From NCBI GenBank assembly GCA_051530055.1, contig CM121342.1:7696691-7760690 (forward strand): DNA of 64,000 nucleotides. Reading direction: 5' to 3'. This document shows, in pieces, positions 24,591 to 53,976 of the stretch; position 1 is the first letter of the stretch, and every line of letters begins with the position of its first letter. Under the pieces are notes generated by a model. It was given only the letters and a program-made list of their open reading frames with translations, did not search any database and was not told the DNA's origin. The DNA is from Neoechinorhynchus agilis (taxonomy: Eukaryota > Animalia > Acanthocephala). The position numbers and the translations under genes were made by a program.

Positions 24591-24940
24591 TCAGTAATTA
24601 AAAGTTGCTTCAATTTTCATTCCTTCAACGATAATCTGTCCTAGCGATCTCATCATTGCGAAGCGATCAATATTAAAGTGTTGGACTAGATTGTTTGAAA
24701 CATTCAAGAAAACAAGATTCGACATTTTGATATCATACAGACTTCCCGGTATACTTCTAAGTTTGTTATCAGCAAGATTAAAAAATATAAGATTTTCCAA
24801 TCCGTCGAACGCATCGATGGGAAATGTACTGAGATCGTTTTGACTGAGATCGATAGCTTCCAACAGGCTAGCAGCTTCAAATGCTTTGGACTTTATATTG
24901 GTTATTATATTTGATTGGAGACTCAAATATTTAAGATTTA
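24591..24940 (-). pseudogene. Displaced 3' end of an LRR gene that complements copy D
   Basis: NLKYLSLQSN...KIEATFNY-stop; begins exactly where copy D is cut at 48803. Confidence 0.9.
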
Positions 24941-24962
24941 CAATTCAAACAATCTGTTTGAA

Positions 24963-25000
24963 GCACATTCACCGCCTCCCGCCAAATTCCAGCTTTTGAG
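24963..25000 (-). mobile_element. ~36-nt 3' terminus of the CRE-clade element
   Basis: CAAAAGCTGGAATTTGGCGGGAGGCGGTGAATGTG versus 43576-43610 CAAAAGCTGGAATTCGGCGGGAGGTGGTGAGTGTG. Confidence 0.85.
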
Positions 25001-26237
25001 CCGCCACGTGTTTAATTCTCTCACCGTTACCAGGTTTTGTTTTTTAGCGAGATAATCTGCGTAGCTCTTGGACCATCGATTTTCAAGGCGGCCAAAATGG
25101 ACTGCGGGACGAATGCCGGGCGAAGACCGAAGTACGCGAGAGCCAGGTAAGTGTTTGTCCTATTAAAGGTAACTGTTGATATGTTATTTCCTCGCAAAAT
25201 GACCGATGGAATGGAATACACGGGATAGTTTCTCGCAATCAAATCTCGAATTCGATTTTCGGACAAGTCGATGTATTCGAGTTTTTTATTGTTACGAAAA
25301 AGATTGCAATGGACATAGTTTAGTTGGTTGTAACTAATCGAGAAGATTTCCAGTAGACGATTATTTCTAAAACTGTCCGAATTGATCGTTGTTATTAGAT
25401 TATGATCAAGAAATATATCTCTCAAGCTTGTTAACTTCAAAAAAGCGTTTTTGTGCAAGTCTTTAATTTTATTATGAAGAAATTGGTGACATTTGCAAGA
25501 TAGGTAATATGGAGATAACGAAGATTTTTAAACGATTCAATTTTGTCTACGGATTTTATTGGATTACCAACTATGTATAATTCCTTAAGATTGTAAAAAG
25601 AGCTGCAATCTTGTGCAGATAAATGTTCAATCAAATTATAACTTAGATCCAGTACTTTTAGGTATCTTAGTCTGCTAATAACGTTTATACTTTCACTTGT
25701 GAGAATATTGTTCGATAAACGAAGTATCCTCAATAACGGCAATTGCTGTGGGAATTGGACAGGAATTACTGATATGTTATTGAAACTCAAACATAGTCCA
25801 ACAACTCTCTTAAGATCTTTAAAAGCGTCCTCTTGAATCTTATCAATTCCAGCTCTCTCAGTATCCAACTGTTTTACACCTCTGAATTTATAAAGTAAAG
25901 AACTGTTTAGTATTGGCGATCTGTATGATTTTTCCGATTCATGAGAGAAAGTTACTTTAACGACTTGGGGAAATAACGAGGCAGAATTTTCAGGAATATC
26001 TTTTAGATCGACATTATAAAATTCAAAATTTTCATGATTGCGTTGAGCAGATCGTAGTAAATTAGTAATCGATTTCATTCTGCCAACATCATCATTTTGG
26101 TAACATCGTATTCCAACGCCTGAGATCGGTTGACAGTGCGTTAACCCGCACTTCGGTTCTCTTCCACTCGGTTCCATTGAAATAAGATTTAGTTGAATGA
26201 CTAACAACAGAAAATTTAAATGAAACACTTTAAACAT
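25001..26237 (-). pseudogene. LRR gene copy A (frameshifting internal deletion near 25480; 3' end replaced)
   Basis: ATG at 26237; about 265 bp between LANVT and HNKIK missing relative to B and C; extra A at ~25045; 5' flank homologous to copy C. Confidence 0.9.
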
Positions 26238-26734
26238 TGCCTTTAAAAAACGACGACGAAAAATTTGCATGAGTAAAAATATGCGTGAAATCCTTAAAGA
26301 ATTAGTACAAGAGCAATACAACACTTTCTCCTGATGCGCGGAGAAAAAGCCAAATTTTACTTCTATCTCGGTAACTTTAGCGACTTCTAATTGACCAGAA
26401 TGATAATTTTCGGCTATGAATACGGTTATGTGAACCTTTCAATCCGAAGCGTAAATGAATTACAATTAAAAATTGTATCATTAATTCGGCTGGATTTGCC
26501 CAAGTTCAGACATTTAAAAAGGTAAAAGCAACCGATTTCCTTTTCAGTCTGCGACAAATTAAAAATTAATAAAGGAATGAAACTTTAACAAAAACTTTAA
26601 GAATCAGAATATTTTTCAGTTTTATTGTCGGCTTTAATCCTTACAAACAATTATTTTTCGTCTATACCGATCAAAAAGGATTATTGGATGTTTTTAAATA
26701 ACTTTTTTTAACACGAGAGATAAATTTTTAATAA

Positions 26735-27100
26735 ATCATTCACACCACCGTTCTGGATAACTGAGCTGCCGTCCTGGTTTAACGGTCGAAAACACGGAAC
26801 AGCAAGACTTATGTTTCGTAGCAGGAATGCTCCCGATATCGGATCGCCATTGATTCCTCTCAATCTCTTGGATAATTGGTTGACCAGGTCCTACGCCGCG
26901 GTATTAAACGATTTGAGTGTCTCGACCCGAAAAAGAACGAAATAATGATTTCGACCCCTGCATTTAATCTTTTTGCTATCCTCAGCGGCGGTTGCTACTC
27001 CCCTGGTTTAATAGGAACGAATGCAATGTTGCTGGCTGCGGACGTGTCCACGAACGTGGCGCCCGCCTTTAGTTCCCCGGCAGTTACCAATGAGATCTAA
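26735..27100 (-). mobile_element. Diverged CRE-clade RLE 3' fragment
   Basis: ATFVDTSAASNI..AEDSKKIKC..HYFVLFRVETLKSF..DLVNQLSKRLRGINGDPISGAFLLRNISLAV aligns to ORF 42468-43604. Confidence 0.85.
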
Positions 27101-27941
27101 TGCATCGCCATGACCAACTTATTCCTTCAGCCAAATTGAGTTGGGCTGAGCATAATAATTTGTATGGTTCCGAATTGGGATGTCTTCTCAGATTTTTAAT
27201 GGGAATAATTGTTTGTTCCTCTTGGATTTCGTTTAATTAATCCCTAGAGAGCTCTGTGGGAAGGTTAGACATAATCAGATTAACTTTCAAAGACATATCA
27301 ATAAATTTTGATGTTGAAGTCATTTAGCATTTGGACAAATAATTGTTTTTATGAAGATTGGTCAGCAGGTACCTGTTTCAGAGTAGTAATTAGATTACTC
27401 ATAGCACTGAACCATCCGGTACGAGCATGTACATCCCTCCGGATCCTCCGATACCTCCAGGAGGCGGGACTCATCAGTGAGTTTCCTCCCTTCAGCGGTA
27501 TTTCGTCCCGAACCAGGTCGGTGAGCTGTGCGCCAGGCCACACATCGAAATAATTGTTATTAAGTTCACAAAAAATTAACATTGTTGCAAACTTTGTGTT
27601 GAAACATTCTTTGTCTTTAAGTTTTAGGAATTTAGAAACCCCCAGTTGCTCTATCAGGTACTTTACAAATGTAGTTCTCCTTCCTGTTAGTCTTTTAAGG
27701 AGCTATGAAGCATTAGTATAGGAGGAACTTGTATGTTAACAAAATTTCTTCATAATGTCGACACAATCACTCAAGACAACTTATATCACACACACGGGAG
27801 CAAACAACTAACCGTTACTTTTTCTTCGTCGATGTATCAGTCCACAGTATTCGGTCAACGAAAGCCAGCGAAATCCGGAGGTCCTGGAGGTCTCATTGGT
27901 ATTGAAATCGGTTCCGAGCGCAAAAAAACCCACAAAAACCA

Positions 27942-30900
27942 TCGCAAAAAGTAAAAGCAACAACAACGTCGTAACGTCCGTTCTTACAACAAAAAGCAAA
28001 TCCACGAACGTCTCGCGCATTAGAGAAATAAACAACAAGGCGAGGTTTGCCTTCAACAACTAAACGTGAGAGTACCGCTTTCGCTGTTAATGCACAAAAA
28101 ACTGCGATACGCCTTTTTATACAGCAAAGTGAGAAGGATCTCATTCGTCGCGAAAGTAAAATAAACAATAACGTCGTAACGTCCGTTCCTTACAACTAAA
28201 AGCAAATCCACGTACGTCTCGTGCATTAGAGAAACAACAACAAAGCGACGTCCGCCTTCAACAACAAAACGTGAGAGTACCGCTTGCGTTGTCATTGTAC
28301 AAAGACTGCGATACGCCTTTTTATCAAGCCAAGTGAGAAAGATCTCATTCGTCGCGAAAGTAAAATAAACAATAACGTCTTAACGTCCGTTCCTTACAAC
28401 TAAAAGCAAATCCACGTACGTCTCGTGAATTAGAGAAACAACAACAAAGCGACGTCCGCCTTCAACAACTAAACGTGAGAGTACCGCTTTCGCTGTTAAT
28501 GAACAAAAAACTGCGATACGCCTTTTTATACAGCAAAGTGAGAAAGATCTCATTCGTCGCGAAAGTAAAATAAACAATAACGTCGTAACGTCCGTTCCTT
28601 ACAACTAAAAGCAAATCCACGTACGTCTCGTGCATTAGAGAAACAACAACAAAGCGACGTCCGCCTTCAACAACTAAACGTGAGAGTACCGCTTGCGTTG
28701 TTATTGTACAAAGACTGCGATACGCCTTTTTATCAAGCAAAGTGAGAAAGATCTCATTCGTCGCGAAAGTAAAATAAACAATAACGTCTTAACGTCCGTT
28801 CCTTACAACTAAAAGCAAATCCACGTACGTCTCGTGCATTAGAGAAACAACAACAAAGCGACGTCCGCCTTCAACAACTAAACGTGAGAGTACCGCCTGC
28901 GTTGTTATTGTACAAAGACTGCGATACGCCCTTTTGTCAATCCCTGTTAGAAAGATCTCATTCGTCGCGAAAGTAAAATAAACAATAACGTCTTAACGTC
29001 CGTTCCTTACAACTAAAAGCAAATCCACGTACGTCTCGTGCATTAGAGAAACAACAACAAAGCGACGTCCGCCTTCAACAACTAAACGTGAGAGTACCGC
29101 TTGCGTTGTCATTGTACAAAGACTGCGATACGCCTTTTTATCAAGCCAAGTGAGAAAGATCTCATTCGTCGCGAAAGTAAAATAAACAATAACGTCTTAA
29201 CGTCCGTTCCTTACAACTAAAAGCAAATCCACGTACGTCTCGTGCATTAGAGAAACAACAACAAAGCGACGTCCGCCTTCAACAACTAAACGTGAGAGTA
29301 CCGCTTGCGTTGTCATTGTACAAAGACTGCGATACGCCTTTTTATCAAGCCAAGTGAGAAAGATCTCATTCGTCGCGAAAGTAAAATAAACAATAACGTC
29401 TTAACGTCCGTTCCTTACAACTAAAAGCAAATCCACGTACGTCTCGTGCATTAGAGAAACAACAACAAAGCGACGTCCGCCTTCAACAACTAAACGTGAG
29501 AGTACCGCTTGCGTTGTTATTGTACAAAGACTGCGATACGCCCTTTTGTCAATCCATGTGAGAAAGATCTCATTCGTCGCGAAAGTAAAATAAACAATAA
29601 CGTCTTAACGTCCGTTCCTTACAACTAAAAGCAAATCCACGTACGTCTCGTGCATTAGAGAAACAACAACAAAGCGACGTCCGCCTTCAACAACTAAACG
29701 TGAGAGTACCGCTTGCGTTGTCATTGTACAAAGACTGCGATACGCCCCTTTGTCAATCCCTGTTAGAAAGATCTCATTCGTCGCGAAAGTAAAATAAACA
29801 ATAACGTCTTAACGTCCGTTCCTTACAACTAAAAGCAAATCCACGTACGTCTCGTGCATTAGAGAAACAACAACAAAGCGACGTCCGCCTTCAACAACAA
29901 AACGTGAGAGTACCGCTTGCGTTGTCATTGTACAAAGACTGCGATACGCCTTTTTATCAAGCCAAGTGAGAAAGATCTCATTCGTCGCGAAAGTAAAATA
30001 AACAATAACGTCTTAACGTCCGTTCCTTACAACTAAAAGCAAATCCACGTACGTCTCGTGCATTAGAGAAACAACAACAAAGCGACGTCCGCCTTCAACA
30101 ACTAAACGTGAGAGTACCGCTTGCGTTGTCATTGTACAAAGACTGCGATACGCCCCTTTGTCAATCCCTGTTAGAAAGATCTCATTCGTCGCGAAAGTAA
30201 AATAAACAATAACGTCTTAACGTCCGTTCCTTACAACTAAAAGCAAATCCACGTACGTCTCGTGCATTAGAGAAACAACAACAAAGCGACGTCCGCCTTC
30301 AACAACAAAACGTGAGAGTACCGCTTGCGTTGTCATTGTACAAAGACTGCGATACGCCCTTTTGTCAATCCATGTGAGAAAGATCTCATTCGTCGCGAAA
30401 GTAAAATAAACAATAACGTCTTAACGTCCGTTCCTTACAACTAAAAGCAAATCCACGTACGTCTCGTGAATTAGAGAAACAACAACAAAGCGACGTCCGC
30501 CTTCAACAACTAAACGTGAGAGTACCGCTTGCGTTGTCATTGTACAAAGACTGCGATACGCCCCTTTGTCAATCCCTGTTAGAAAGATCTCATTCGTCGC
30601 GAAAGTAAAATAAACAATAACGTCGTAACGTCCGTTCCTTACAACTAAAAGCAAATCCACGTACGTCTCGTGCATTAGAGAAACAACAACAAAGCGACGT
30701 CCGCCTTCAACAACTAAACGAGTACCGCTTGCGTTGTTATTGTACAAAGACTGCGATACGCCTTTTTATCAATCCATGTTAGAAAGATCTCATTCGTCGC
30801 GAAAGTAAAATAAACAATAACGTCTTAACGTCCGTTCCTTACAACTAAAAGCAAATCCACGTACGTCTCGTGCATTAGAGAAACAACAACAAAGCGACGT

Positions 30901-32189
30901 CCGCCTTCAACAACTAAACGTGAGAGTACCGCTTGCGTTGTTATTGTACAAAGACTGCGATACGCCCCTTTGTCAATCCCTGTTAGAAAGATCTCATTCG
31001 TCGCGAAAGTAAAATAAACAATAACGTCGTAACGTCCGTTCCTTACAACTAAAAGCAAATCCACGTACGTCTCGTGCATTAGAGAAACAACAACAAAGCG
31101 ACGTCCGCCTTCAACAACTAAACGTGAGAGTACCGCTTGCGTTGTTATTGTACAAAGACTGCGATACGCCCCTTTGTCAATCCCTGTTAGAAAGATCTCA
31201 TTCGTCGCGAAAGTAAAATAAACAATAACGTCTTAACGTCCGTTCCTTACAACTAAAAGCAAATCCACGTACGTCTCGTGCATTAGAGAAACAACAACAA
31301 AGCGACGTCCGCCTTCAACAAAACGTGAGAGTACCGCCTGCGTTGTTATTGTACAAAGACTGCGATACGCCCCTTTGTCAATCCCTGTTAGAAAGATCTC
31401 ATTCGTCGCGAAAGTAAAATAAACAATAACGTCTTAACGTCCGTTCCTTACAACTAAAAGCAAATCCACGTACGTCTCGTGCATTAGAGAAACAACAACA
31501 AAGCGACGTCCGCCTTCAACAACTAAACGTGAGAGTACCGCTTGCGTTGTCATTGTACAAAGACTGCGATACGCCCCTTTGTCAATCCCTGTTAGAAAGA
31601 TCTCATTCGTCGCGAAAGTAAAATAAACAATAACGTCTTAACGTCCGTTCCTTACAACTAAAAGCAAATCCACGTACGTCTCGTGCATTAGAGAAACAAC
31701 AACAAAGCGACGTCCGCCTTCAACAACTAAACGTGAGAGTACCGCCTGCGTTGTTATTGTACAAAGACTGCGATACGCCTTTTTATCAAGCCATGTGAGA
31801 AAGATCTCATTCGTCGCGAAAGTAAAATAAACAATAACGTCTTAACGTCCGTTCCTTACAACTAAAAGCAAATCCACGTACGTCTCGTGCATTAGAGAAA
31901 CAACAACAAAGCGACGTCCGCCTTCAACAACTAAACGTGAGAGTACCGCCTGCGTTGTTATTGTACAAAGACTGCGATACGCCCCTTTGTCAATCCCTGT
32001 TAGAAAGGTCTCATTCGTCGCGAAGGTAAAATAAACAATAACGTCGTAACGTCCGTTCCTTACAACTAAAAGCAAATCCACGTACGTCTCGTTCATTGGA
32101 GAAACAACAACAAAGCGACGTCCGCCTTCAACAACTAAACGTGAGAGTACCGCTTGCGTTGTTATTGTACAAAGACTGCGATACGCCCT
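27942..32189. repeat. Tandem satellite with a 204-bp unit (~21 copies) made of three diverged ~68-bp monomers
   Basis: AACAATAACG recurs at 28981, 29185 and 29389 (period 204); the leftmost units are more diverged. Confidence 0.97.
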
Positions 32190-34124: not shown

Positions 34125-36053
34125 TCAGTAATTAAAAGTTGCTTTAATTTTCATTCCTTCGACGACTATCTGTCCAAGCGATCTCATCACTGCGAAGTGA
34201 TCAATATTAAAGTGCTGGACTAGATTGTTTGAAACATTCAAGAAAACAAGATTCGGCATTTTGATATCATAAAGGCTTCCTGGTATACTTCTAAGTTTGT
34301 TATCAGCAAGATTAAAAAATATAAGATTTTCCAATCCGTCGAACGCATCAACAGGAAATGTACTGAGATCGTTTTGACTGAGATCGATAGCTTCCAACAG
34401 GCTAGCAGCTTCAAATGCTTTTGACTTTATATTGGTTATTATATTTGATTGGAGACTCAAATATTTAAGATTGGATAAACCTGAAAAATCGGAAGGAGCA
34501 AGCATTGTTATTTGATTATTGCTCAAGTCCAGAGAAGTTAAAGTATTGATTGGTAGCCACATATTGATTTCTGTCACCGTTGTCATGTTTTTGTTTTTTA
34601 GCGAGATAATCTGTGTAGCTCTTGGACCATAGATTTTCAAGGCGGTTAAAATGGACTGCGGGACGAATTCCGAGCGAAGGCCGAAATATGCTAGATTCAA
34701 GTAAGTGTTTGTCCTATTGAAGGTAACTGTTGATATGTTATTTCCTCGCAAAATGACCGATGGAATGGAATACACGGGATAGTTTCTCGCAATCAAATCT
34801 CGAATTCGATTTTCGGACAAGTCGATGTATTCGAGTTTTTTATTGTTACGAAAAAGATTGCAATGGACATAGTTTAGTTGGTTGTAACTAATCGAGAAGA
34901 TTTCCAGTAGACGATTATTTCTAAAACTGTCCGAATTGATCGTTGTTATTAGATTATGATCAAGAAATATATCTCTCAAGCCTGTTAACTTCGAAAAAGC
35001 GTTTTTGTGGAAGCCGTTTATTTTATTATGAGGAAGACGGAGTATTGTAAGACTTGTCCAGTAATCGAAATCATTTTCGTCGATGAATTTTATTTGATTA
35101 AACACTAATGAAAATTTCTTTATATTTTCCTTTGTTTGTAAGTTTCCAGGTGGAATCGATTTCAATTGATTTCTCGTTATCTCAAGATTTTCAAGTCGAG
35201 GCGCTGCAACTAACAAGTTAGTGTCAAACGCTTTAGCTGATCCATCAGTGATAATAAATTCATATAACCTTGAATATTGGTCTTTATGGCTTAATAAATC
35301 GGTTACATTTGCGAGATAGGTAATATGGAGATAACGAAGATTTTTAAACGATTCCATTTTGTCTACGGATTTTATTGGATTACCAACTATGTACAATTCC
35401 TCAAGATTGTAAAAAGCGCTGTAGTCCTGTGCAGATAAATGTTCAATCAAATTATTATTTAAATCCAATACTTTTAGGTATCTTAGTCTGCTAATAACGT
35501 TTATACTTTCACTTGTGAGAATATTGTTCGATAAACGAAGTATCCTCAATAACGGCAATTGCTTTGGGAATTGGGTGGGAATTACTGATATGTTGTTGAA
35601 ACTCAAACTTAGTCGAAGAATTCTCATAAATTCTTTAAAAGCGTCTTCTTGAATCTTAACAATTCCAGCTCGCTCAATGTCCAACTGTCTCACACTTTTG
35701 AGTTTATGAAGTAAAGAATTGCTCAGTACTGACGATTTGTATGATTTTTCCGATTCATGAGCGAAAGTTACTTTAACAACTTGGGGAAATAACGAAGCGA
35801 AATTTTCAGGAATATCTTTTAGATCGACATTATAAAATTCAAAGTTTTCCTGACTGCGTTGAGCAGATCGTAATAAATTAGCAATCAATTCCACTCTCCC
35901 AACATCATCATTTTCGTAACATCGTATTCCAAAGCCTGAGATCGGTTGACAGTGCGTTAGCTCGCACTTCGGTTCTCTTCCACTCGGTTCCATTGAAATA
36001 AGATTTAGTTGAATGACTAACAATAGAATATTAAAATGAAACACTTTAAACAT
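34125..36053 (-). CDS. LRR protein copy B: intact, intronless, 642 aa, putative signal peptide, no TM or TIR domain
   Basis: 1929-bp ORF from MFKVFHFNILLLVIQL; many LxxLxLxxNxI repeats. Confidence 0.92.
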   Translation of the reverse strand: MFKVFHFNILLLVIQLNLISMEPSGREPKCELTHCQPISGFGIRCYENDDVGRVELIANLLRSAQRSQENFEFYNVDLKDIPENFASLFPQVVKVTFAHESEKSYKSSVLSNSLLHKLKSVRQLDIERAGIVKIQEDAFKEFMRILRLSLSFNNISVIPTQFPKQLPLLRILRLSNNILTSESINVISRLRYLKVLDLNNNLIEHLSAQDYSAFYNLEELYIVGNPIKSVDKMESFKNLRYLHITYLANVTDLLSHKDQYSRLYEFIITDGSAKAFDTNLLVAAPRLENLEITRNQLKSIPPGNLQTKENIKKFSLVFNQIKFIDENDFDYWTSLTILRLPHNKINGFHKNAFSKLTGLRDIFLDHNLITTINSDSFRNNRLLEIFSISYNQLNYVHCNLFRNNKKLEYIDLSENRIRDLIARNYPVYSIPSVILRGNNISTVTFNRTNTYLNLAYFGLRSEFVPQSILTALKIYGPRATQIISLKNKNMTTVTEINMWLPINTLTSLDLSNNQITMLAPSDFSGLSNLKYLSLQSNIITNIKSKAFEAASLLEAIDLSQNDLSTFPVDAFDGLENLIFFNLADNKLRSIPGSLYDIKMPNLVFLNVSNNLVQHFNIDHFAVMRSLGQIVVEGMKIKATFNY

Positions 36054-37808
36054 TGCGGCTAGAAAACGACGGCGAAAAAATAGAGACAACTCGTGTACAT
36101 TTATACATTTTGCATGAGTAAAAATATGCGTTAGATCCTTAAGGGATGAGTATAAGAGCAATACAACGCTCTTTTCACCGATGCGTGGAGAAAACGGCAA
36201 AATCTTGGTTTTACCTCGAAAACTTGAGTTACATTTAATAATTCGGAATTAGATAGACTTTGCGGTTGGGAAAAAGTATTATGTAAGACTGTCAATCTGA
36301 AACATAAAAAAGTGGAATCATTTATTCAGCCGAGAGCAAAAGTGAAAAGGATATATATAAATATCTAATTTGAGTTTGTACCTATGAGGAAATTTCGAGG
36401 CAGCTACTCAAGTACTTATTTTCGAACCTGAACTTTTTAGGTCACATAAATATTTCAAGCTTTTTTCCATAAATATTCACCTGAGGAATTGAATATGGTA
36501 TCGAAGATACGGTCTCTTAGCCTTTTCGACTTTTTCGCACTTTTCTGATCTCTTGATGACGTTGAAGCTTCCCAATATAGTAAGTTAGAAGATCAGTTGG
36601 AAAATTGATCTTCAGTGTAACATTTAATTTTTTTAAATTTTTTAATACCAATAAAGGAAAAATGGCAGAAAGATTGATGCAGCTCAAATAAAATTGGTTC
36701 AACAAATATTGCGAATATTCTTTGAGTATCAAAGGTCGAATTTTGCAATATTTTTTAACTCGACATTGCAAATGGTAGAATTGCTTAATTGTTTACGTGC
36801 AATCTTCAAAGCAAATTCCATTTTTATGAGTAAATTTCACCCAATAAAACCATGTAAAAGTAATTGCAAATCGATAGTTAACCTGTTTATTGTGGTCCTT
36901 AAATTCTTTATTAGTATTTCTTCTAAAATCTTCCAACGTTATTCAAGATACTTCTATTGGCCACAAATTGCGACGTAATTGAACCTCTTTTTGTCAAGTG
37001 CTTATAAAATAAAATTGCAAGTTGTCACGGTGCTGAGATGAATGGTAATTTGCCTTCATTTCGGGTTTTGGTTCAATTAAGAATATCGGCAATTTGGGAT
37101 CCTACAGTGCTTGAATAAAAAGTACTTTTCATCATAACACCGAAGTCTTTAATTTAGGAGCTTGTTTTAAAAGATTAAATGTTTACTGAATTGTTTTTAT
37201 AACTAAATCACAACAAATCTCGGATAATCAAAAGTTTTCAACAAGTTGGAAACAAAAAGTACACATTATAGGCAAAACCCATTAATAATATAACCATTAA
37301 GAGTCAAATGGGACTTAAAGAGAGGGTATTACAAATGAAATCGATTATAACTAATGGCTTTAGATTTGTTCAGATTTTCATGATGCCTCAAAAGAAATGC
37401 AACGATAAAAGATGGAATAAAATAGAGCAGAAAAGTATCCAATACTTCAGCAGACCAATAAACAGAATAATCCTATGACGTGGTGGATTAATCAGCCGCT
37501 AAGATTAATCGAGCAAAACATTGAAATAAAATCACTGATTTTCAGTTCAGATCTCGAAATAAATAGTATGACAAATTTTTCCAACTTTGAAACATTGAAA
37601 TTCTTGATGCAGCTTAAAAACACCAGTCGCATATTCATGGATTCTTATTGGTAGAAATGCAATTATTATCTAGTAAATAATAATTTATCAATCAGCATTT
37701 TCCAGAAATTGTTTTTTAATTATATAATGATTACGTAATATAATTATACCACAAAACGAAACCCTTTCTGAGAAGGTCACAAAAGCGAAAAAGCTATATT
37801 GCCCAAAA

Positions 37809-38582
37809 ATGAATAACGATCAAAACGAAGATGAGCTAATGCAATCCGACCAAGAGAGCAGAGATGGGTCGTCTTATTTTCTCAGACCTGAACACCCCGA
37901 GGACAATGAAACGCTGGCTCATTTGAACGAAAATATCCCTGTAGCTGCTGCGTTTTTCGAGAATAGCTTGGTGCGTGTTATCGGTGCAATGGGTCCCTAC
38001 CAATTTTACGTTTGGCCATTGAACGAAGCTGAATATAATTCAAATTTTCTCTATGAAATGAATGATTATTATTCTAGTCCCGCTAACCAGAATGACAATG
38101 ACCATGGATCAGGAGATGAAATGACTATTCACGTTGTAGCTTATGGAGGGCAATATTACCGAGCTCGCATTTTAATTCGACAATATCGTCTTTATACCGT
38201 TTATTTGGTCGATTTCGGTATTACGGCAATCGTAGAAGAATGTTTCATATTTACCTGCGAACCGCAATTTGCATTAGTGCCGGATATGGCATATCCATGC
38301 AGTCTAGAAGATGGCATGTCGCCCTCAACGGGTTCAATTTTCGATGAAATTCTTTTTCGAGCAATTGTTCTTGGAAACGTATTTGAAGCTCAACTTTTAT
38401 ATGTCGATACGTTCGAATGGACACGAATTATTGTAAAACTTTGGAGAGTTCAAAGAATCGGGTACGAGTTTATTAGGATTGCAAACGACCTGGAAGTGCA
38501 AGATCAACGAATACCAATTAGAGCGTTGCTATTGGATGTACAAAATGTGATAAGGCTTCGCTATCCAAATCTCCTTTCGTAA
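37809..38582 (+). CDS. Intronless single extended-Tudor-domain protein (257 aa)
   Basis: Nearly identical to 14363-15136. Confidence 0.85.
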   Translation: MNNDQNEDELMQSDQESRDGSSYFLRPEHPEDNETLAHLNENIPVAAAFFENSLVRVIGAMGPYQFYVWPLNEAEYNSNFLYEMNDYYSSPANQNDNDHGSGDEMTIHVVAYGGQYYRARILIRQYRLYTVYLVDFGITAIVEECFIFTCEPQFALVPDMAYPCSLEDGMSPSTGSIFDEILFRAIVLGNVFEAQLLYVDTFEWTRIIVKLWRVQRIGYEFIRIANDLEVQDQRIPIRALLLDVQNVIRLRYPNLLS

Positions 38583-39956
38583 GATGGACAACAGATAAAC
38601 CGAAGGTATTATCTTCGGACAAGTGAAGAATAACTAGACGATTTTTTGACGATTAACATTTTAATATATTCCAAATTATTTTATTTAATAAATATTAACG
38701 AATTGTTTTGCAGATCAATGGATACCTTTCCTTTTAATAAAATGAAGCAGTATGTTAAGGAGTTGGTTAGCAACAGAAGGAATACATCCATCACATTCGT
38801 TTGAGTAAATGTACAAATATTGATAAATTTATACAAATATTTAACATATTTGGTTCCTTGTACGACCGCTCGATACACAATTATTTGGGAATAATTATTT
38901 TTATATTGCCTGAAAGATATTGTTTAGTATTTACGTTCCCAAATAAATCAATTATTCTAAGTGCTTTCCACAACATTAAATATTTTTTAAATTGATCAGA
39001 AATTAACAAAAAAATTTCCATTACAAAACGCGCGAATAAAAAATGTCGAATCGAATTTGTCTAGTTCTAAATTCAGATTCACTTAAGTAATATTCGTTTC
39101 AACTAGTAAACAAAGATAAAGTCGAAAAAATTTACAAATGCTGCATATCGACAGTGACAAATTTCGGATATCTTTGCAAAAGTACGATTATGTTAAATTA
39201 AGGTACAAAGTTAATACTTTTAGTAAAAGACTTTGCATAAATGATGATTGGCTACCTCGATAAGAATGTTGCAAGTTTTCACCCACTTTTAGGTAAATAA
39301 GTGAATTTTCGTCACTCAAATGAAATAAATTACTCGAAGGACAACGAACGTATTTCTGACTAAATAAAGCGCGAGAAATATTTTTAATTTCTACGATCGT
39401 GGAATACCAATATTTTGTCATTTTAAAGCAATATTTTCTATAAGAAGTATAAAGATGATACGTAAATTAAATTCGGACTTATCATAGAGTGAGATCCTTA
39501 TATAAAGTAAGAAGTTTGAATAAACGCTAATAATTTCTGTAACTATTTCGATTACTTATAGGCGTACGTTGTCATTTAATTGCCCAAGCGATATTCATAG
39601 GAAAGTTGCAGTTTTCCTAGAAAAAATCGTATCCTGCTAGTTACAATAACTAGTAAATTTTAAGAATAAATTTTTTTGGGAAAGCCGATAGACATCATGG
39701 ACTCGAATTCGAACAGGAATTGGCGAGAAAAATAAACAACTTTTCAATCTAATACAACTCCTCATTCAGCTCGGCCAAATTAGATCAAACAATTCGCTCG
39801 AAAATATACAAGCAACACAGTATTCTTATAATATTAATAAAGAATGCAATGAAATCAGTGGAGTAAAATGTGAACCCTTTTTATTTCTATATGTTGCTTG
39901 CTCTTACCGTAAAAGAAATCCAACGATAAAAAGTTTTAATAATAGGATCATAAAAT

Positions 39957-41885
39957 TCAGTAATTATAAGTTGCTTTAATTTTCATTCCATTGACGACGA
40001 TCTGTCCAAGCGATCTCATCATTGCGAAGCGATCAATATTAAAGTGTTGGACTAGATTGTTTGAAACATTCAAGAAAACAAGATTCGACATTTTGATATC
40101 ATAAAGACTTCCCGGTATACTTCTAAGTTTGTTATCAGCAAGATTAAAAAATATAAGATTTTCCAATCCGTCGAACGCATCAACAGGAAATGTACTGAGA
40201 TCGTTTTGACTGAGATCGATAGCTTCCAACAGGCTAGCAGCTTCAAATGCTTTGGACTTTATATTGGTTATTATATTTGATTGGAGACTCAAATATTTAA
40301 GATTGGATAATCCTGAAAAATCGGAAGGAGCAAGCATTGTTATTTGATTATTGCTCAAGTCCAGAGAAGTTAAAGTATCGATTAGCAGCCACGTGCTTAA
40401 TTCTCTCACCGTTACCAGGTTTTGGTTTTTTAGCGAGATAATCTGCGTAGCTCTTGGACCATCGATTTTCAAGGCGGCCAAAATGGACTGCGGGACGAAT
40501 TCCGAGCGAAGACCGAAGTACGCGAGAGCCAAGTAAGTGTTTGTCCTATTAAAGGTAACTGTTGATATGTTATTTCCCCGTAAAACCACCGATGAAATGA
40601 AATACATGGGAGAATTTCTTGCAATCAAATCTCGAATTCGATTTTCGGACAAGTCGATATATCCCAGTTTTCTTGTATTCCGGAAAAGATTGCGATTGAC
40701 ATAATTTAGTTGGTTGTAACTAATCGAGAAGATTTCCAGTAGACCATTATTTCTAAAACTGTCCGAATTGATCGTTGTTATTAGATTATGATCAAGAAAT
40801 ATATCTCTTAAGTTGGTTAACTTTGAAAATGCGTTTTTGTGGAAACCTTTAATTTTATTATCTTGAAGATGTAGTATTGTAAGACTTGTCCAGTAATCGA
40901 AATCATTTTCGTCGATGAAATTTATTTGATTAAACGCCAATGAAAATTTCTTTATATTTTCCTTTGTTTGTAAGTTTCCAGGTGGAATCGATTTCAATTG
41001 ATTTCTCGTTATCTCGAGATTTTCAAGTCGAGGTGCTGCAACTAACAAGTTAGTGTCAAACGCTTTAGCTGATCCATCAGTGACAATAAATTCATATAAT
41101 CTTGAATATTGGCCTTTATTTCTTAATAAATCGGTTACATTTGCGAGATAGGTAATATGGAGATAACGAAGATTTTTAAACGATTCCATTTTGTCTACGG
41201 ATTTTATTGGATTACCAACTATGTACAATTCCTCAAGATTGTAAAAAGCGCTGTAGTCCTGTGCAGATAAATGTTCAATCAAATTATTATTTAAATCCAA
41301 TACTTTTAGGTATCTTAGTCTGCTAATAACGTTTATACTTTCACTTGTGAGAATATTGTTCGATAAACGAAGTATCCTCAATAACGGCAATTGCTTTGGG
41401 AATTGGGTGGGAATTACTGATATGTTGTTGAAACTCAAACTTAGTCGAAGAATTCTCTTAAATTCTTTAAAAGCGTCCTCTTGAATCTTATCAATTCCAG
41501 CTCTTTCAATGTCCAATTGTTTTACATCTCTGAATTTATAAAGTAAAGAACTGCTGAGTACTGGCGATTTGTATGACTTTTCCGATTCATGAGAGAAAGT
41601 TACTTTAACGACTTGGGGAAATAACGAGGCAAAATTTTCAGGAATATCTTTAAGATCGACATTATTAAATTCAAAATTTTCATGATTGCGTTGAGCCGAT
41701 CGTAATAAATTATTAATCGATTTCATTCTGCCAACATCATCATTTTGGTAACATCGTATTCCAACGCCTGAGATCGGTTGACAGTGCGTTAACCCGCACT
41801 TCGGTTCTCTTCCACTCGGTTCCATTGAATTAAGTTTTTGTTGAATGACTAACAACAGAATATTTAAATAAAACACTTTGAACAT
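39957..41885 (-). CDS. LRR protein copy C: intact, intronless, 642 aa
   Basis: 1929-bp ORF from MFKVFYLNILLLVIQ; paralog of B. Confidence 0.92.
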   Translation of the reverse strand: MFKVFYLNILLLVIQQKLNSMEPSGREPKCGLTHCQPISGVGIRCYQNDDVGRMKSINNLLRSAQRNHENFEFNNVDLKDIPENFASLFPQVVKVTFSHESEKSYKSPVLSSSLLYKFRDVKQLDIERAGIDKIQEDAFKEFKRILRLSLSFNNISVIPTQFPKQLPLLRILRLSNNILTSESINVISRLRYLKVLDLNNNLIEHLSAQDYSAFYNLEELYIVGNPIKSVDKMESFKNLRYLHITYLANVTDLLRNKGQYSRLYEFIVTDGSAKAFDTNLLVAAPRLENLEITRNQLKSIPPGNLQTKENIKKFSLAFNQINFIDENDFDYWTSLTILHLQDNKIKGFHKNAFSKLTNLRDIFLDHNLITTINSDSFRNNGLLEIFSISYNQLNYVNRNLFRNTRKLGYIDLSENRIRDLIARNSPMYFISSVVLRGNNISTVTFNRTNTYLALAYFGLRSEFVPQSILAALKIDGPRATQIISLKNQNLVTVRELSTWLLIDTLTSLDLSNNQITMLAPSDFSGLSNLKYLSLQSNIITNIKSKAFEAASLLEAIDLSQNDLSTFPVDAFDGLENLIFFNLADNKLRSIPGSLYDIKMSNLVFLNVSNNLVQHFNIDRFAMMRSLGQIVVNGMKIKATYNY

Positions 41886-42429
41886 TGCCTTTAAAAAACG
41901 ACGACGAAAAAATGGAGACAACTCGTGTACATTTGTACATTTGCATGAGTAAAAATATGCGTGAGATCTTTAAAGAATGAGTATAAGAGCAATACAACGC
42001 TCTTTCTCCCGCCAAATTTCTCTTCTATCTCGGTAACTTTAGCGACTTCTAATTGACCAGAATGATAATTTTCGGCCATGAATACAGTAATGTGAACCTT
42101 TCAATCGGAAGCGTAAATGAATTATAATTAAAAATGGCATCATTGTAAAAATAATCGATTTTTTTTCAGTCTGCGGCAAATTAAAATTTAATAGAGGAAT
42201 GAAACTTTAACAAAAAGTTTGAGAATTAGAATAATTTTTCAAATTTTGTCTCGACTTGAATCCTTAATAACAATTATTTTTCGTCTATATCGAACAAAAA
42301 AGGATTCCTAGATGTTGTTAAATAATTTTTTAACAAGCGAGATTAATTTTTATTAACATTTAATAAATAGACGTATTAATATTAATCGATTTCGAATTGT
42401 CGTATAAATGTAAATAAAACTTTTTATCC

Positions 42430-43610
42430 AATTTCTCATAAAGAACGCGCTCTTCATCCCCAAATTATTGTACAAGGTTCGCACAGCAACATTTTTCAAA
42501 CACAAAAAAGGATTGGCAAAGCTGGACGATAAGGTGAGGGCATGCCTTGAGCGTATTTTAAATGTCCAGCTCTCAGATGAAGCGTGGCGACAAGCTTCTT
42601 TGCCTGTGTCATCTGGGGGATTGGGAATTCGGGCACTAGTCGACCTTGCTTTGCCGGCCTTTCTTGGATCGTTTGAGGGGAGCTTACCAGTCTCGAAGAA
42701 CATTTTGAAGGAAAAGTTCTGTCTTGACCGGGATTTCGTGGTGGCGGTTGAGGAATGGTGCCAGCAGACAGGCGCTAACCATGTTCCCGTGAATGGCCTC
42801 AGACAGTCGATCAGGGACGGACCTCTTGTCGCGAGAGCTCACAACTCTCTACTTTCCGGTTCTCGTGATGGGGTCGTCCGAGCTAGACTGTTGGCAGTTT
42901 CAACACGAGAATCTGGGGCGTGGTTGGAGGCTGTTCCTCTGGCATCAGTGGGAACTCTTCTTACTGACGAGGTAACGAGGATCGCAATATCTTTAAGACT
43001 TGGTCTCCCGATATGCACGCCCCATCGCTGTCGATGTGGGTCTTTGGTTGATGCTTTCGGGCGACACGGTCTCGTCTGCAGAATGTCAGGAGGAAGGTTC
43101 TCACGCCATTCTGAAGTCAATAACGCAATTTCTCGGACGTTGAGAACGGCGAACTTCCTGAACATCCTGGAACCCGCCCACCTCTGTAGACTAGACGGCC
43201 GTAGGCCCGATGGAATTTCGGTCTTCCCGTGGCGGGAGGGCAAATGCCTTCTCTGGGACGCCACGTGTGTGGATACCCTCGCAGCCAGCAACATCCCCTA
43301 CTCCCTCGAAATCGCCGGCGGTGCCGCCAGTGCAGCGAAAGGGAGGAAAATACGGAAATATCTTCACTTATCGAGGGCTCACTATTTTGTCCCCTTTGGG
43401 GTAGAGACGTATGGAGCGTTCGGCAGCTCGGCACTCCCTCTGCTCCAGGATCTCTCGAAGAAATTGAGAGAGGCAACCGGAGACTCAAGAGCAGGCGTAT
43501 TCCTTCGACAAAATATCTCGCTAGCAGTACAACGGGACAATGCTGCCAGCGTGATGGCGACGGTCGAGGAAGGACAAAAGCTGGAATTCGGCGGGAGGTG
43601 GTGAGTGTGT
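42430..43610 (+). mobile_element. 5'-truncated CRE-clade non-LTR retrotransposon (thumb, zinc knuckle, restriction-like endonuclease)
   Basis: QASLPVSSGGLGIR; CRCG..DAFGRHGLVC; RRPDG..LLWD; KIRKY; VETYG; open to the stop at 43604. Confidence 0.9.
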
Positions 43611-43899
43611 TAATTGTCGAGAAATAAAGATTGATTGAATACATTTACAAGATAACCAGTTGTATTTCCACTTTTATTAAGTTATACCTCAAAAACTAAA
43701 AGCAATGAAGGGTTTTGACGAACTAAAATGCAAATTTTTGTACTTAAGGCTCACGGACTAGCCGGTTACATTTATTCTGTGCTGAATTGAAGGCTTTTCC
43801 ACGGCTGATAATTTTCTTTGGCTCTTATAACAACACTTTTTTGTTAATTGACAAAGAATAGAAACACTCGAGTTCTGATTGGATAAATGAATCCGGCTA

Positions 43900-45656: not shown

Positions 45657-45799
45657 TCAGGAGAAGCAGAAAATTCCGAAATCTATGCTAAAAATAAAAG
45701 TTTTTCACGTTGTTGATGCTTATGAATATTTTATGGAACTATCAAACGTCCGTTCAGAGGAAAGAGATAAACTGGCTCAATTTGAAAAATATTTTTTTC

Positions 45800-48225: not shown

Positions 48226-48419
48226 AAAACAGTTTCATATTCGCGCAGCATTTCTGCAACGATTCGTTGATATCAGAAAACTTACGAAAAGAAAGCAAAA
48301 CTCCTGATTAAACGGTTTCTTTCTTGGACTCTAAGACTAAATTTCTACCTTTAAGAATCACAGTTTTCGTAACCGACATTGAACTGTTTCGGTAGTCAAT
48401 CATTTTAAAGTGCTATAAA

Positions 48420-48803
48420 ATGAGTTATAAAGAAGAAACCAAAGCGAGCTGTCGATCTTTGTTTCCAAATTCGGCCGATAAAATAACCAATAAGAATAAC
48501 GTGATTGTGCTTGACAATGGAGCTTATTTCCTGAAATTCGGGTCTGCACTCTCTTCGAAGCCTCGAAAGCTTCCGAATTTCTTTGTTCGAACCCGGTCTC
48601 ATCCCCAAAAACATTTTATATCTCTGGATGATCTGGAGCGTTTGGATAAGACTTCAATGGTTTACTATCATTGTTTTTTGGAAGGATACCTTAGCGATTG
48701 GAATATTCAATCACACATTTGGCAGAAATTATTCGAAATTGAGCTGCAAAGATTAGAAATTGTTCCTGAAAATACTTCTATCGTCGTAACTGAACCGATT
48801 AAT
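48420..48803 (+). pseudogene. ACTR6: ARP6 5' half, cut after TEPIN and fused to antisense LRR copy D
   Basis: VIVLDNGAYFLKFG..LPN..EGYLSDWNIQSHIWQKLF..SIVVTEP matches the ARP6 N-terminus (LVLDNGAY, GYLVNWDVQ..VWDYLF, IIITEP). Confidence 0.92.
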
Positions 48804-50383
48804 AAAAAATCTGAAAAATCTTTAGGTTCAAGAATTGTTATTTGATTATTGTTCAAATCGAGAGAAGTTATAGTATTGGTTGTTAGCCACTTGTTTATTG
48901 TTCTCACCGTTGTCAGGGTTTGGTTTCTTAGCCAGATAATCTGCGTAGACTTTTTACCATAGATCTTCAAGGCGGTTAAAATGGACTGCGGGACGAATTC
49001 CGAGCGAAGACCGAAGTACGCGAGAGTTAGGTAAATGTTCGTCCTATTGAAGGTTACTGTTGATATGTTATTTCCTCGTAAAACGACCGATGGAATGGAA
49101 TACACGGGATAGTTTCTTGCAATCAAGTCTCGAATTTGATTTTCGGACAAGTCGATGTATTCGAGTTTTTTATTGTTACGAAAAAGATTGCAATGGACAT
49201 AGTTTAGTTGGTTGTAACTAATCGAGAAGATTTCCAGTAGACGATTATTCCTTAAACTGTTCGAGTTGATCGTTGTTATTAGATTATGATCAAGAAATAT
49301 ATCTCTCAAGCCTGTTAACTTCGAAAATGCGTTTTTGTGGAAGCCGTTTATTTTATTATGAGGAAGACGGAGTATTGTAAGACTTGTCCAGTAATCGAAA
49401 TCATTTTCGTCGATGAATTTTATTTGATTAAACGCTAATGAAAATTTCTTTATATTTTCCGTTGTTTGTAAGTTTCCAGGTGGAATCCATTTCAATTGAT
49501 TTCTCGTTATCTCGAGATTTTCAAGTCGAGGTGCTGCAGCTAACAAGTTAGTGTCAAACGCTTTAGCTGATCCATCAGTGACAATAAATTCATATAACCT
49601 TGAATATTGATCTTTATGGCTTAATAAATCGGTTACATTTGCGAGATAGGTAATATGGAGATAACGAAGATTTTTAAACGATTCCATTTTGTCTACGGAT
49701 TTTATTGGATTACCAACTATGTATAATTCCTTAAGAGGGTAAAAAGAGCTGCAATCTTGTGCAGATAAATGTTCAATCAAATTATTATTTAAATCCAATA
49801 CTTTTAGGTATCTTAGTTTTCTAACAACGTTTATACTTTCACTTGTGAGAATATTGTTCGATAAACGAAGCATCTCCAATAGCGGTAATTGCTGTGGGAA
49901 TTGGACAGGAATTACTGATATGTTGTTGAAACTCAAACTTAGTCGAACAACTCTCTTAAGATCTTTAAAAGCGTCTTCTTGAATCTTAACAATTCCAGCT
50001 CTCTCAATGTCCAACTGTTTTACACGTCTGAGTTTATAAAGTAAAGAACTGCTCAGTACTGACGATCTGCTTGACTTTTCCGATTCATGAGAGAAAGTTA
50101 CTTTAACTACTTTTGAAAAGACCAAAGCAAACTTTTCAGGAATATCTTTAAGATCGACATTATTAAATTCAAATATTTTCTGATTGTGTTGAGCAGATCG
50201 CAATAAATTAGTCATCGATTTCATTCTCCCAGCAGCATCATTTTCGTAACACCCTATTCCAAAGCCTAATATCGATTGACAGCGCGTTATTTTGATTTTC
50301 GATTCTCTTCCACTCGGTTCCATTGAAATAAGATTTAGTTGAATGACTAACCATAGAATATTTAAATCAAACACTGGAAACAT
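48803..50383 (-). pseudogene. LRR copy D, 3'-truncated at DFSDFL
   Basis: Open from the ATG at 50383; LRR homology stops at 48803, after which the frame reads into antisense ARP6. Confidence 0.92.
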
Positions 50384-53962: not shown

Positions 53963-53976
53963 AAGCCGCTTGACAT

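What the first reader, a model, noticed from the sequence alone, without database searches (positions are those of the whole stretch)
24591..50383. LRR copy D and its missing 3' end, 24 kb away, rejoin to exactly 1,929 bp
Seen: D (minus) stops at ...GAT TTT TCA GAT TTT TTA (48803), and the fragment at 24940 starts TA AAT CTT AAA TAT. Overlapping the shared TA gives DFSDFLNLKYLSLQ in register with DFSGLSNLKYLSLQ of B and C. The length is 1581+350-2 = 1929 bp, identical to intact B (34125-36053) and C (39957-41885). The junction at 48803 therefore joins broken ends of two different genes, and both partners lie within this window. Inference: one complex event with nearly lossless breaks produced the present order.
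Basis: partly seen in the sequence, partly recalled or inferred. Interest (0 to 1): 0.82.

Follow-up and report, generated by a model that had tools for sequence, protein, structure and literature searches.

The report
Two genes broken and reshuffled together
In this thorny-headed worm genome, one LRR gene and the housekeeping gene ARP6 were each cut in two and rejoined in the wrong order within 35 kb. The joints are partly patched with the tail of a jumping element. This is a known kind of accident, and the sequencing reads do not yet confirm it.

Summary
Copy D (minus strand, ATG at 50383) loses family homology at 48807, which is CDS position 1577. The fragment at 24938-24591 resumes at CDS position 1582. 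The two edges are 4 nt apart, so the sum is 1,925 bp plus 4 letters that cannot be assigned. Exactly 1,929 bp is possible but not provable.

The fragment is not A's own 3' end. It is a 425-bp insert (24514-24938) between two identical 24-nt copies of a retroelement's 3' terminus. After the second copy, an A-type 3' UTR and flank resume.

D's junction partner is the first 129 codons of ARP6 (48420-48806, plus strand). The rest of ARP6 starts codon-exact at 15513/15514. Placing 15514-24940 between 48806 and 48807 would make both reading frames continuous.

I read this as a multi-break cut-and-paste rearrangement, probably linked to retroelement endonuclease and reverse transcriptase. One independent DNA run shows the empty site with a single 24-mer and none of the insert's private letters, so the insert is polymorphic. 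Junctions 15513 and 48806 were not tested with reads, and the assembly comes from about 50 pooled worms. This is a new example of a known kind.

The parts
48807..50383 (-). LRR copy D: CDS positions 1-1577, cut off at its 3' end. GenBank annotates it as a 558-aa protein that reads on into antisense ARP6.
48420..48806 (+). ARP6 (actin-related protein 6) start codon through codon 129. It ends ...ATT AAT AAA and abuts D head-on.
   Evidence: Pfam Actin 1.9e-12. Best PDB match is ARP6 chain 6igm_G, 5.8e-10. tblastn of ARP6 homologues covers aa 1-104.
15513..16752 (+). Rest of ARP6: one exon from (A)CG AGA ATC... to about 15671, an intron, then about 16018-16752. It begins exactly where a 99.6% copy of 36698-38959 ends.
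   Evidence: tblastn covers aa ~113-410. Pfam Actin positions 224-397, 2.3e-27. Alignment with X at the break shows conserved spacing. Sequence.
24514..24938 (-). The fragment: LRR CDS positions 1582-1929 plus 77 nt of B-type 3' UTR. It carries 7 letters found in none of the six family members compared (B, C, L001, L003, L004, L005).
24939..24962 (-). 24-nt repeat copy 1 (TTCAAACAGATTGTTTGAATTGTA), the 3' terminus of a retroelement, with a 7-bp hairpin stem.
24490..24513 (-). 24-nt repeat copy 2, identical to copy 1.
   Evidence: The 24-mer occurs exactly twice in the window; 0 expected by chance.
24963..24998 (-). A further 36 nt of the same retroelement tail (CAAAAGCTGG...GTGAATGTGC).
   Evidence: It matches 43575-43609 (91%) and 53883-53916 (94%). 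DNA depth is about 30 times single-copy, and an RNA contig runs on into canonical element sequence.
24999..26237 (-). LRR copy A body: CDS to about position 1494. It is a pseudogene with an internal 259-bp deletion.
24313..24489 (-). A/C-type 3' UTR (from UTR+17) and downstream flank, resuming after repeat copy 2. Its first 63 nt duplicate the fragment's UTR but differ at 12 of 63 positions.
   Evidence: 94% to L001, 91% to C, 68% to B.
12150..15513 (+). Patchwork left of the ARP6 3' half: 204-bp satellite (672 bp); 43 bp of LRR 5' CDS (100% to B); 393 bp of LRR middle (98.5% to C); 2,262 bp that are 99.6% identical to 36698-38959.
   Evidence: RNA contigs carry the 12864 junction.
42356..43645 (+). 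5'-truncated retroelement of the same family, with a 378-aa ORF. It sits where C's upstream homology to A and L001 stops, and its 3' end faces the block that carries ARP6's 5' half.

Best explanation
**What it is.** This is the scar of a germline multi-break, cut-and-paste rearrangement inside an LRR gene cluster of Neoechinorhynchus agilis.

**The breaks.** Breaks fell in ARP6 between codons 129 and 130, in LRR copy D at CDS positions 1578-1581, and at copy A. The fragments were rejoined in the same orientation but in the wrong order.
- ARP6's 5' half now abuts D's body (48806|48807).
- ARP6's 3' half abuts an unrelated patchwork (15513|15514).
- D's severed 3' end (425 bp) sits beside A's truncated body.

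**Favoured geometry.** A had already lost its own 3' end to a 58-nt retroelement-tail insertion. ARP6 and A were convergent neighbours. In the event, the block carrying ARP6's 5' half moved into D's break. A shard of D running exactly from that break was then captured at a staggered cut in A's element tail, which duplicated 24 nt as a target-site duplication.

**Likely agent.** The breaks and short reverse-transcribed fillers probably come from the endonuclease and reverse transcriptase of a non-LTR retroelement that is active in this genome. The other joints were sealed by end joining, with 0-5 nt of microhomology.

**Consequences on this haplotype.** ARP6 is split, D is truncated, and the pseudogene A carries D's last LRRs.

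**Shown:** the anatomy, the two complementary gene halves, the repeat around the insert, and the empty-site contig.

**Inferred:** that it was a single event, the role of the retroelement enzymes, and which block moved.

**Confidence.** The figure of 0.6 is for the general claim: D's severed 3' end was relocated in a multi-break rearrangement that also split ARP6. The favoured geometry alone is about 0.5.
For: 1. D's homology edge (CDS 1577) and the fragment's edge (CDS 1582) are 4 nt apart.
2. The ARP6 halves are complementary to the codon. Reading TEPINK + (A)CG + RINAERMYDILF gives the 7-residue spacing seen in 14 ARP6 homologues.
3. The fragment is foreign to A.
   - It is bracketed by two identical 24-mers that occur nowhere else in the window.
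   - Its UTR is B-type, while the UTR and flank after the second 24-mer are A/C-type.
   - A's 5' flank groups with C, L001, L003 and L004 (87-92%), and so does that 3' flank (88-94% to L001, C and L004, though only 77% to L003). D's 5' flank is nearest B.
4. No annotated paralogue supplies the fragment. The best protein match is 110/115, and it has 7 private DNA letters.
5. DNA run X1 differs from the assembly at unique sites. It has a contig reading A-type UTR, one 24-mer, then element tail. It shows none of the private letters at the three covered sites and no contig over 24601-24633. This is the empty-site pattern of an insertion with a target-site duplication.
6. The 58-nt tail belongs to a repeat of about 30 copies whose other copies end at the same 3' terminus. 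Its orientation is what priming from the adjoining DNA end would give.
7. D's break lies in TTTTTT/AAA, and all other breaks are in A/T-rich sites.
8. L1 ORF2p-made breaks at distant loci are known to be ligated into rearrangements and to tether fragments (PMC11702581).
Against: - No read-level support was obtained for 15513|15514 or 48806|48807, and none for the insert-bearing allele itself. Only short Logan contigs of 23000-27000 could be laid.
- The assembly is a hybrid of Illumina and Nanopore data from a pool of about 50 worms.
- The favoured geometry needs about six breaks with no inverted fragment. It leaves the original left neighbour of the ARP6 5' block unknown.
- D's shard landed, in the right orientation, at the homologous part of a paralogue. 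That is itself roughly a 1% coincidence unless something guided it.
- If X1 carries an unrearranged chromosome, its intact D should show the fragment's private letters, and it does not.
- The family is a gene-conversion mosaic, which weakens all arguments based on sequence type.
Confidence: 0.6

Rival explanations
1. Simple three-break block exchange. ARP6 and D were convergent neighbours. The 9.4-kb block 15514-24940, running from ARP6's 3' half to D's 3' end, was cut out, and its donor site was resealed as 48806|48807. The block was inserted between the Tudor-region copy (15513) and A's body, with a freshly reverse-transcribed 58-nt element tail as filler and about 1.4 kb lost. On this view the second 24-mer and the duplicated UTR were already in D's UTR, and the empty-site allele arose later by deletion between the two 24-mers. 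This is a variant geometry of the general claim in the best explanation, not an alternative to it.
For: It needs the fewest breaks. One re-ordering makes both frames continuous. It puts A directly beside a Tudor-region copy, as C and the L001 locus are arranged. The absence of the fragment's private letters in X1 follows directly if X1 carries the deletion derivative.
Against: D would then have a B-like 5' flank and a B-type UTR followed by an A/C-type UTR and flank. A 63-nt target duplication whose copies differ at 12 of 63 positions would be needed, plus gene conversion. A precise 449-bp deletion would have to be common enough to be the only allele seen in X1. The break in A would lie within about 85 nt of the homologous position of D's break for no stated reason.
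Confidence: 0.2
2. Coincidence. The fragment is A's own 3' end, or comes from some other paralogue. It is flanked by two separate short retroelement-tail insertions. D lost its 3' end independently in the ARP6 rearrangement, and that piece is gone.
For: The fragment lies where A's 3' end should be and in the right orientation. B-to-A gene conversion is evident from a 200/200 identical tract and could explain the B-type UTR. The window was selected because of the coincidence. No private letters of the fragment were seen in X1.
Against: The edges match within 4 nt, about 0.5% by chance. Two independent insertions would have to carry identical 24-mers. The duplicated UTR copies are of different lineage types. 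The empty-site contig has exactly one 24-mer. A-type flank resumes after the second 24-mer.
Confidence: 0.12
3. Assembly artefact. The order, or the insert-bearing allele, is a chimera produced by hybrid assembly of pooled haplotypes and paralogues and by Hi-C re-ordering.
For: The assembly used a pool of about 50 worms, R9.4 Nanopore reads, MaSuRCA/Flye, purge_dups and Hi-C scaffolding. The insert-bearing allele and junctions 15513 and 48806 have no independent confirmation.
Against: The junctions lie in unique coding sequence, not in repeats. There are no Ns in the window. None of the three junctions coincides with a DpnII or HinfI site, read directly; the nearest are a HinfI site 4 nt from 15513|15514 and one about 20 nt from 24940|24941. 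Three artefactual joins would not produce two codon-level complementary gene halves plus an exact 24-nt duplication.
Confidence: 0.1

Closest known systems
LINE-1 ORF2p-induced chromosomal rearrangements (Mendez-Dorantes et al. 2024, PMC11702581)
   Same: Breaks made by a retroelement endonuclease at separate loci are ligated to each other. Short reverse-transcribed element 3' ends sit at the joints. Target sequence is deleted or duplicated, and fragments can be tethered or shattered.
   Different: That work is experimental and cancer-related, in human cells, with poly(A)-tailed L1. Here the case is a germline, polymorphic variant in an acanthocephalan. The element ends in a hairpin without poly(A), only 24-58 nt of it is present, and enzyme involvement is inferred from anatomy alone.
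Germline chromothripsis-like or balanced complex rearrangements, and three-break intrachromosomal insertions ('shifts') (from my own knowledge of the human cytogenomics literature)
   Same: Several simultaneous breaks. The outcome is copy-neutral, with small losses and blunt or microhomology joints. Broken genes have their halves lying apart.
   Different: The scale is only about 35 kb. No fragment is inverted. Retroelement tails serve as fillers. One shard is flanked by a 24-nt duplication.
Retroelement-insertion-associated deletions with template switching (SVA at NF1, PMC4229983)
   Same: A truncated retroelement insertion marks the boundary of a large non-recurrent deletion or rearrangement.
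   Different: Those cases are deletions only. Here the removed pieces are re-used elsewhere.
Interlocus gene conversion or non-allelic homologous recombination in tandem LRR families
   Same: Paralogues exchange 3' ends and chimeric copies arise. This family is visibly a conversion mosaic.
   Different: The joints here are non-homologous. They are offset by about 85 nt and filled with foreign sequence, which homologous exchange does not produce.

Membership tests
Retroelement (TPRT/endonuclease)-associated rearrangement | The 3' terminus of a non-LTR element lies at the joint, oriented so that the adjoining DNA end could have primed it. | tested here: met
   The 58-nt tail (24998-24941) ends against the fragment, and the 24-mer (24513-24490) ends against the A-type UTR. 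Other genomic copies end at the same terminus.
Retroelement (TPRT/endonuclease)-associated rearrangement | The element is an autonomous non-LTR retrotransposon with endonuclease and reverse transcriptase. | tested here: inconclusive
   The tail matches the end of the 42356-43609 copy. That copy's 378-aa ORF has no Pfam hit. Its nearest ESM Atlas cluster, which is not shown to be a relative, has a model that superposes on RVT_1-bearing proteins. A neighbouring degenerate LINE has EEP and RVT_1 domains, but it is not shown to be the same family.
Retroelement (TPRT/endonuclease)-associated rearrangement | A target-site duplication around the inserted DNA, and an empty site with one copy. | tested here: met
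   Exact 24-nt direct repeat. The X1 contig reads UTR, one 24-mer, then element tail. A precise deletion between the repeats would look the same.
Retroelement (TPRT/endonuclease)-associated rearrangement | An endonuclease target motif at the breaks. | tested here: inconclusive
   D's break lies in TTTTTT/AAA and the other breaks are A/T-rich. The genome is 65% A+T, and this element's site preference is unknown.
Balanced multi-break cut-and-paste rearrangement | Each broken gene's two halves are present once, and one re-ordering makes them complementary. | tested here: met
   ARP6 is exact to the codon; D is exact to 0-4 nt. All are single copies within the window. Genome-wide copy number was not tested.
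Balanced multi-break cut-and-paste rearrangement | Each novel junction is spanned by independent reads. | tested here: inconclusive
   Only 23000-27000 could be laid, and only with short contigs. They show the empty-site allele and do not show the insert-bearing one. Junctions 15513 and 48806 were not examined.
Processed (RNA-mediated) retrocopy of an LRR mRNA | A poly(A) tail, or an end at the mRNA's 3' end. | tested here: not met
   There is no A-run at 24514. B-type transcripts run well beyond UTR+77.
Homologous exchange (gene conversion or NAHR) between A and D | The junction lies inside shared homology, with no foreign letters. | tested here: not met
   About 85 nt of gene are missing, with 58 nt of element tail between A's body and the fragment.
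ARP6 (ACTR6) | An actin fold, with ARP6 as the best match among actin-related proteins. | tested here: met
   Pfam Actin on both halves. The best PDB hit is ARP6 chain 6igm_G. The 44 full-length (350-500 aa) proteins recovered with the 5' half align to both pieces.

The most novel reading that the evidence does not exclude
A retroelement's endonuclease and reverse transcriptase cut several sites in a parasite's LRR gene cluster in one germline event. It then pasted a chromosomal DNA shard, the last LRRs of one paralogue, into another paralogue with a target-site duplication. That would be DNA-level 'exon shuffling' by a LINE, caught while still polymorphic, and at the cost of splitting the conserved chromatin gene ARP6.
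Probability: 0.25. Interest if true: 0.6.

Novelty: new member of a known kind. Interest (0 to 1): 0.45.

Why it matters
If reads confirm it, this would be a rare natural, germline, still-segregating example of a small complex rearrangement in which every piece can be traced. Two genes are cut, all four halves are recovered, and retroelement tails and a target-site duplication sit at the joints.

It would show how non-LTR elements can reshuffle a fast-evolving LRR family in a parasite beyond simple insertion. It would also flag a haplotype on which ARP6, a conserved subunit of the H2A.Z-depositing remodeller (from my own knowledge), is split. That bears on claims of gene loss in acanthocephalans.

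It also warns annotators: the 558-aa 'protein' of copy D is a truncated gene that reads into antisense ARP6.

Tried and rejected
- **Fragment as A's own 3' end.** BLAST first suggested one continuous A alignment. Base-level reading showed the replaced stretch, the two 24-mers and the resumed UTR, so I rejected this as the main reading.
- **Other paralogues as donor.** Sixteen family proteins and four fetched loci (L001, L003-L005) were compared. None matches the fragment exactly, and none has the 24-mer or the element tail in its UTR.
- **Divergence jump at the break as a test of D origin.** This is uninformative. The 100 nt before the break are hypervariable in all copies, and the 100 nt after are conserved in all.
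- **Tandem duplication followed by deletions, NAHR duplication product, and purely replicative template switching.** Each needs the same breakpoints to be re-used by independent events, so I rejected them on parsimony.
- **Hi-C re-ordering at restriction sites.** No junction coincides with a DpnII or HinfI site (read).
- **A second ARP6 copy.** A search with the 3' ORF returned nothing at E<=1e-10. A blank from this word-based search says little.
- **Exact-protein look-ups of junction-spanning ORFs in public assemblies.** Nothing is on record.
- **Hairpin stability.** A 7-bp stem is predicted, but the tail as a whole folds no better than shuffles (z = -0.43).
- **Reads.** Only short Logan contigs were available, many cross-mapped from paralogues. 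They could not test junctions 15513 and 48806.

They were aligned as separate rows.
Full report
**Source of the sequence.** The LRR proteins of the window match only "hypothetical proteins" of Neoechinorhynchus agilis, an acanthocephalan parasite of fish. Copy D lies on CM121342.1 at about 7.74 Mb of assembly GCA_051530055.1. The family has about 16 members, and outside this species identity is 29% or less. According to its authors, the assembly is a MaSuRCA hybrid of Illumina and R9.4 Nanopore reads from a pool of about 50 worms. It also used data from single females and was scaffolded with Hi-C (PMC12690905). That limits how far any single-haplotype reading can be trusted.

**The observation.** There are four LRR copies on the minus strand. 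B (34125-36053) and C (39957-41885) are intact at 1,929 bp. D starts at 50383 and is collinear with B and C down to 48807, where it reads ...GATTTTTCAGATTT and then loses all similarity. The fragment matches B and C from AATCTTAAAT at 24938, through the stop at 24591, to 24514, which is 77 nt into the 3' UTR.

In gene coordinates D ends at 1577 and the fragment starts at 1582. However, the four bridging letters are ambiguous. Those at 48803-48806 are equally the reverse complement of ARP6 codons AAT-AAA. The TA at 24939-24940 is equally the end of a 24-nt repeat. Two independent edges would fall this close about 0.5% of the time.

**The fragment is not A's own 3' end.** Read on the minus strand, the order is as follows:

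| Element | Coordinates |
|---|---|
| A's body | to about 24999 (CDS ~1494) |
| Retroelement tail, 36 nt | 24998-24963 |
| 24-mer TTCAAACAGATTGTTTGAATTGTA | 24962-24939 |
| The fragment | 24938-24514 |
| The same 24-mer | 24513-24490 |
| LRR 3' UTR restarting at UTR+17, plus 114 nt of flank | 24489-24313 |

The 24-mer occurs exactly twice in the window, and none is expected by chance. The restarted UTR duplicates 63 nt of the fragment's UTR but belongs to a different lineage. The fragment's UTR is of the type seen only in B. The restarted UTR and flank are of the type seen in C, L001 and L004.

The flank comparison gives the same split:

| Compared sequence | Identity |
|---|---|
| A's 5' flank vs C, L001, L003, L004 | 87-92% |
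| A's 5' flank vs D | 69% |
| A's 5' flank vs B | 75% |
| D's 5' flank vs B (its nearest) | 78% |
| 3' flank 24313-24489 vs L001 | 94% |
| 3' flank 24313-24489 vs C | 91% |
| 3' flank 24313-24489 vs B | 68% |

So the flank after the second 24-mer goes with A, and the fragment goes with a B/D-type gene. No annotated paralogue supplies the fragment. The best protein match is 110/115, and it has seven DNA letters found in none of the six copies compared (B, C, L001, L003, L004, L005).

**The fillers.** The 58 nt next to A's body match the 3' end of a repeated element. The match is 91% to 43575-43609, at the end of a 5'-truncated copy with a 378-aa ORF, and 94% to 53883-53916. The ORF has no Pfam hit. 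Its nearest ESM Atlas cluster, which is not shown to be a relative, has a model that superposes on RVT_1-bearing proteins. In DNA run X1 this stretch has about 30 times single-copy depth. Contigs from other loci end at the same terminus, and an RNA contig runs on into canonical element sequence. The last 19 nt form a 7-bp hairpin, but the tail as a whole folds no better than shuffles.

**The other broken gene.** The plus-strand sequence abutting D (48420-48806) encodes 129 codons of an actin-family protein. Its best solved relative is ARP6. I used full-length ARP6 homologues from a library-wide search as tblastn queries. They locate the rest of the gene at 15525-15671 and 16018-16743 on the same strand, with Pfam Actin positions 224-397.

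The 3' half begins exactly where a 99.6% copy of 36698-38959 stops. Reading ...CCG ATT AAT AAA | (A)CG AGA ATC AAT GCC... gives TEPINK-T-RINAERMYDILF. In an alignment made with X at the break, this has the same 7-residue spacing as 14 homologues. The ARP6 break is therefore exact to the codon, with at most 1 nt of overlap at either new joint.

**Geometry.** Three junctions matter: 15513|15514, 24938-40|24941 and 48806|48807. Placing 15514-24940 between 48806 and 48807 makes both ARP6 and D continuous. All pieces keep their strand. I considered two histories.

*(a) Block exchange.* ARP6 and D were convergent neighbours. The 9.4-kb block between their breaks was cut out and inserted next to A's body, with a freshly made element tail as filler and about 1.4 kb lost.

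*(b) Fragmented history.* ARP6 and A were the convergent neighbours, and A already carried the 58-nt tail in place of its 3' end. The block with ARP6's 5' half was moved into D's break. There a 1.3-kb copy of the same element family (42356-43645) bridges it to C's truncated upstream region. A 425-bp shard of D, ending exactly at that break, was captured at a staggered cut in A's element tail, duplicating 24 nt.

**Evidence between the two.** Flank typing and the UTR types fit (b). So does the only read-level evidence I could get, from DNA run X1.
- X1 differs from the assembly at unique sites 23936 and 24345, so it is another individual or haplotype.
- X1 has a contig that runs from the A-type UTR through one 24-mer into GCACATTCA, the element tail. 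That is the site without the fragment.
- At the three private sites that X1 covers (24642, 24738, 24816), only the paralogue letters appear.
- No X1 contig lies on 24601-24633.

One repeat copy at an empty site is the classical signature of an insertion with a target-site duplication. A precise deletion between the 24-mers would look the same, and that is what (a) requires.

One point speaks against (b). An unrearranged X1 should carry an intact D with the fragment's private letters, and it shows none. I put (b) at about 0.5, (a) at 0.2, coincidence at 0.12 and artefact at 0.1.

**Mechanism.** The 48806|48807 joint allows up to 5 nt of microhomology (TAAAA). The 15513|15514 joint allows 1 nt. 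D's break lies in TTTTTT/AAA, and the other breaks are A/T-rich. In each case the element tail's 3' end faces the DNA end that could have primed reverse transcription. This matches what L1 ORF2p is reported to do in human cells: it makes breaks that are ligated across loci, with complex local rearrangements and tethered fragments (PMC11702581). That retroelement enzymes made these particular breaks is inference.

**Background instability.** The family is a gene-conversion mosaic. For example, A and B are identical over 200 nt while their neighbouring segments differ by 8-15%. Left of 15513 lies a patchwork of recent copies from the A-C interval. One of its internal joints also appears in RNA contigs of two other runs, so at least that part is not private to the assembly. 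A paralogous locus 470 kb away (L001) shows a simpler layout: R-flank, A-type upstream region, LRR gene, flank, Tudor gene.

**Limits.** Only one stretch could be laid on reads, and only as short contigs that cross-map among paralogues. Junctions 15513 and 48806, and the insert-bearing allele itself, remain unconfirmed. No second haplotype or sister-species sequence was available to polarise the history.

**Verdict.** The locus records a multi-break rearrangement that also split ARP6. It is a good new example of a known kind of event, not a new kind.

Noticed in passing
window 27948-32188 and 12150-12821: A satellite with a period of about 204 bp. There are roughly 21 copies between A and B, with units 91-98% alike, and a 3.3-copy piece next to the LRR patchwork.
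   Followed up: partly
window 12822-15513: A patchwork of recent copies in scrambled order: 43 bp of LRR 5' CDS, then 393 bp of LRR middle, then 2,262 bp of the B-C intergenic region with a second Tudor gene. The joints have 0-3 nt of microhomology. The 12864 joint is also present in RNA contigs of runs X3 and X4.
   Followed up: partly
window 53503-63906: A tandem repeat of about 3,975 bp, 95-96% alike, with 2.6 copies. This region is annotated with MFS/sugar-transporter genes.
   Followed up: no
window 19454-20772 (minus strand): Degenerate Penelope-like retroelement: GIY-YIG endonuclease and reverse-transcriptase ORF fragments.
   Followed up: partly
window 21213-21650 (minus) and 17622-18419 (minus): A homeodomain gene, and a diverged Tudor-domain paralogue about 70% identical to the Tudor gene at 37809-38582. 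Both lie between ARP6's 3' half and copy A.
   Followed up: no
window 25477-25481: Copy A lacks 259 bp (B coordinates 35035-35293) and is broken into three ORFs, so it is a pseudogene independently of its 3' end.
   Followed up: partly
window 25100-25300 vs 34775-34975: A and B are identical over 200 nt (CDS 1079-1279), while neighbouring segments differ by 8-15%. This is a recent interlocus gene-conversion tract.
   Followed up: partly
window 48707-50488: The public annotation gives D as a 558-aa protein. Its last ~33 residues are antisense ARP6, not LRR sequence.
   Followed up: yes
window 7738-8589: An inverted repeat or palindrome of about 850 bp, with arms 88% complementary.
   Followed up: no
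window 23114-23188: An RNA contig of run X4 skips 73 nt with GT..AG ends. This points to a spliced, unannotated transcript in the region between the homeobox gene and copy A.
   Followed up: no
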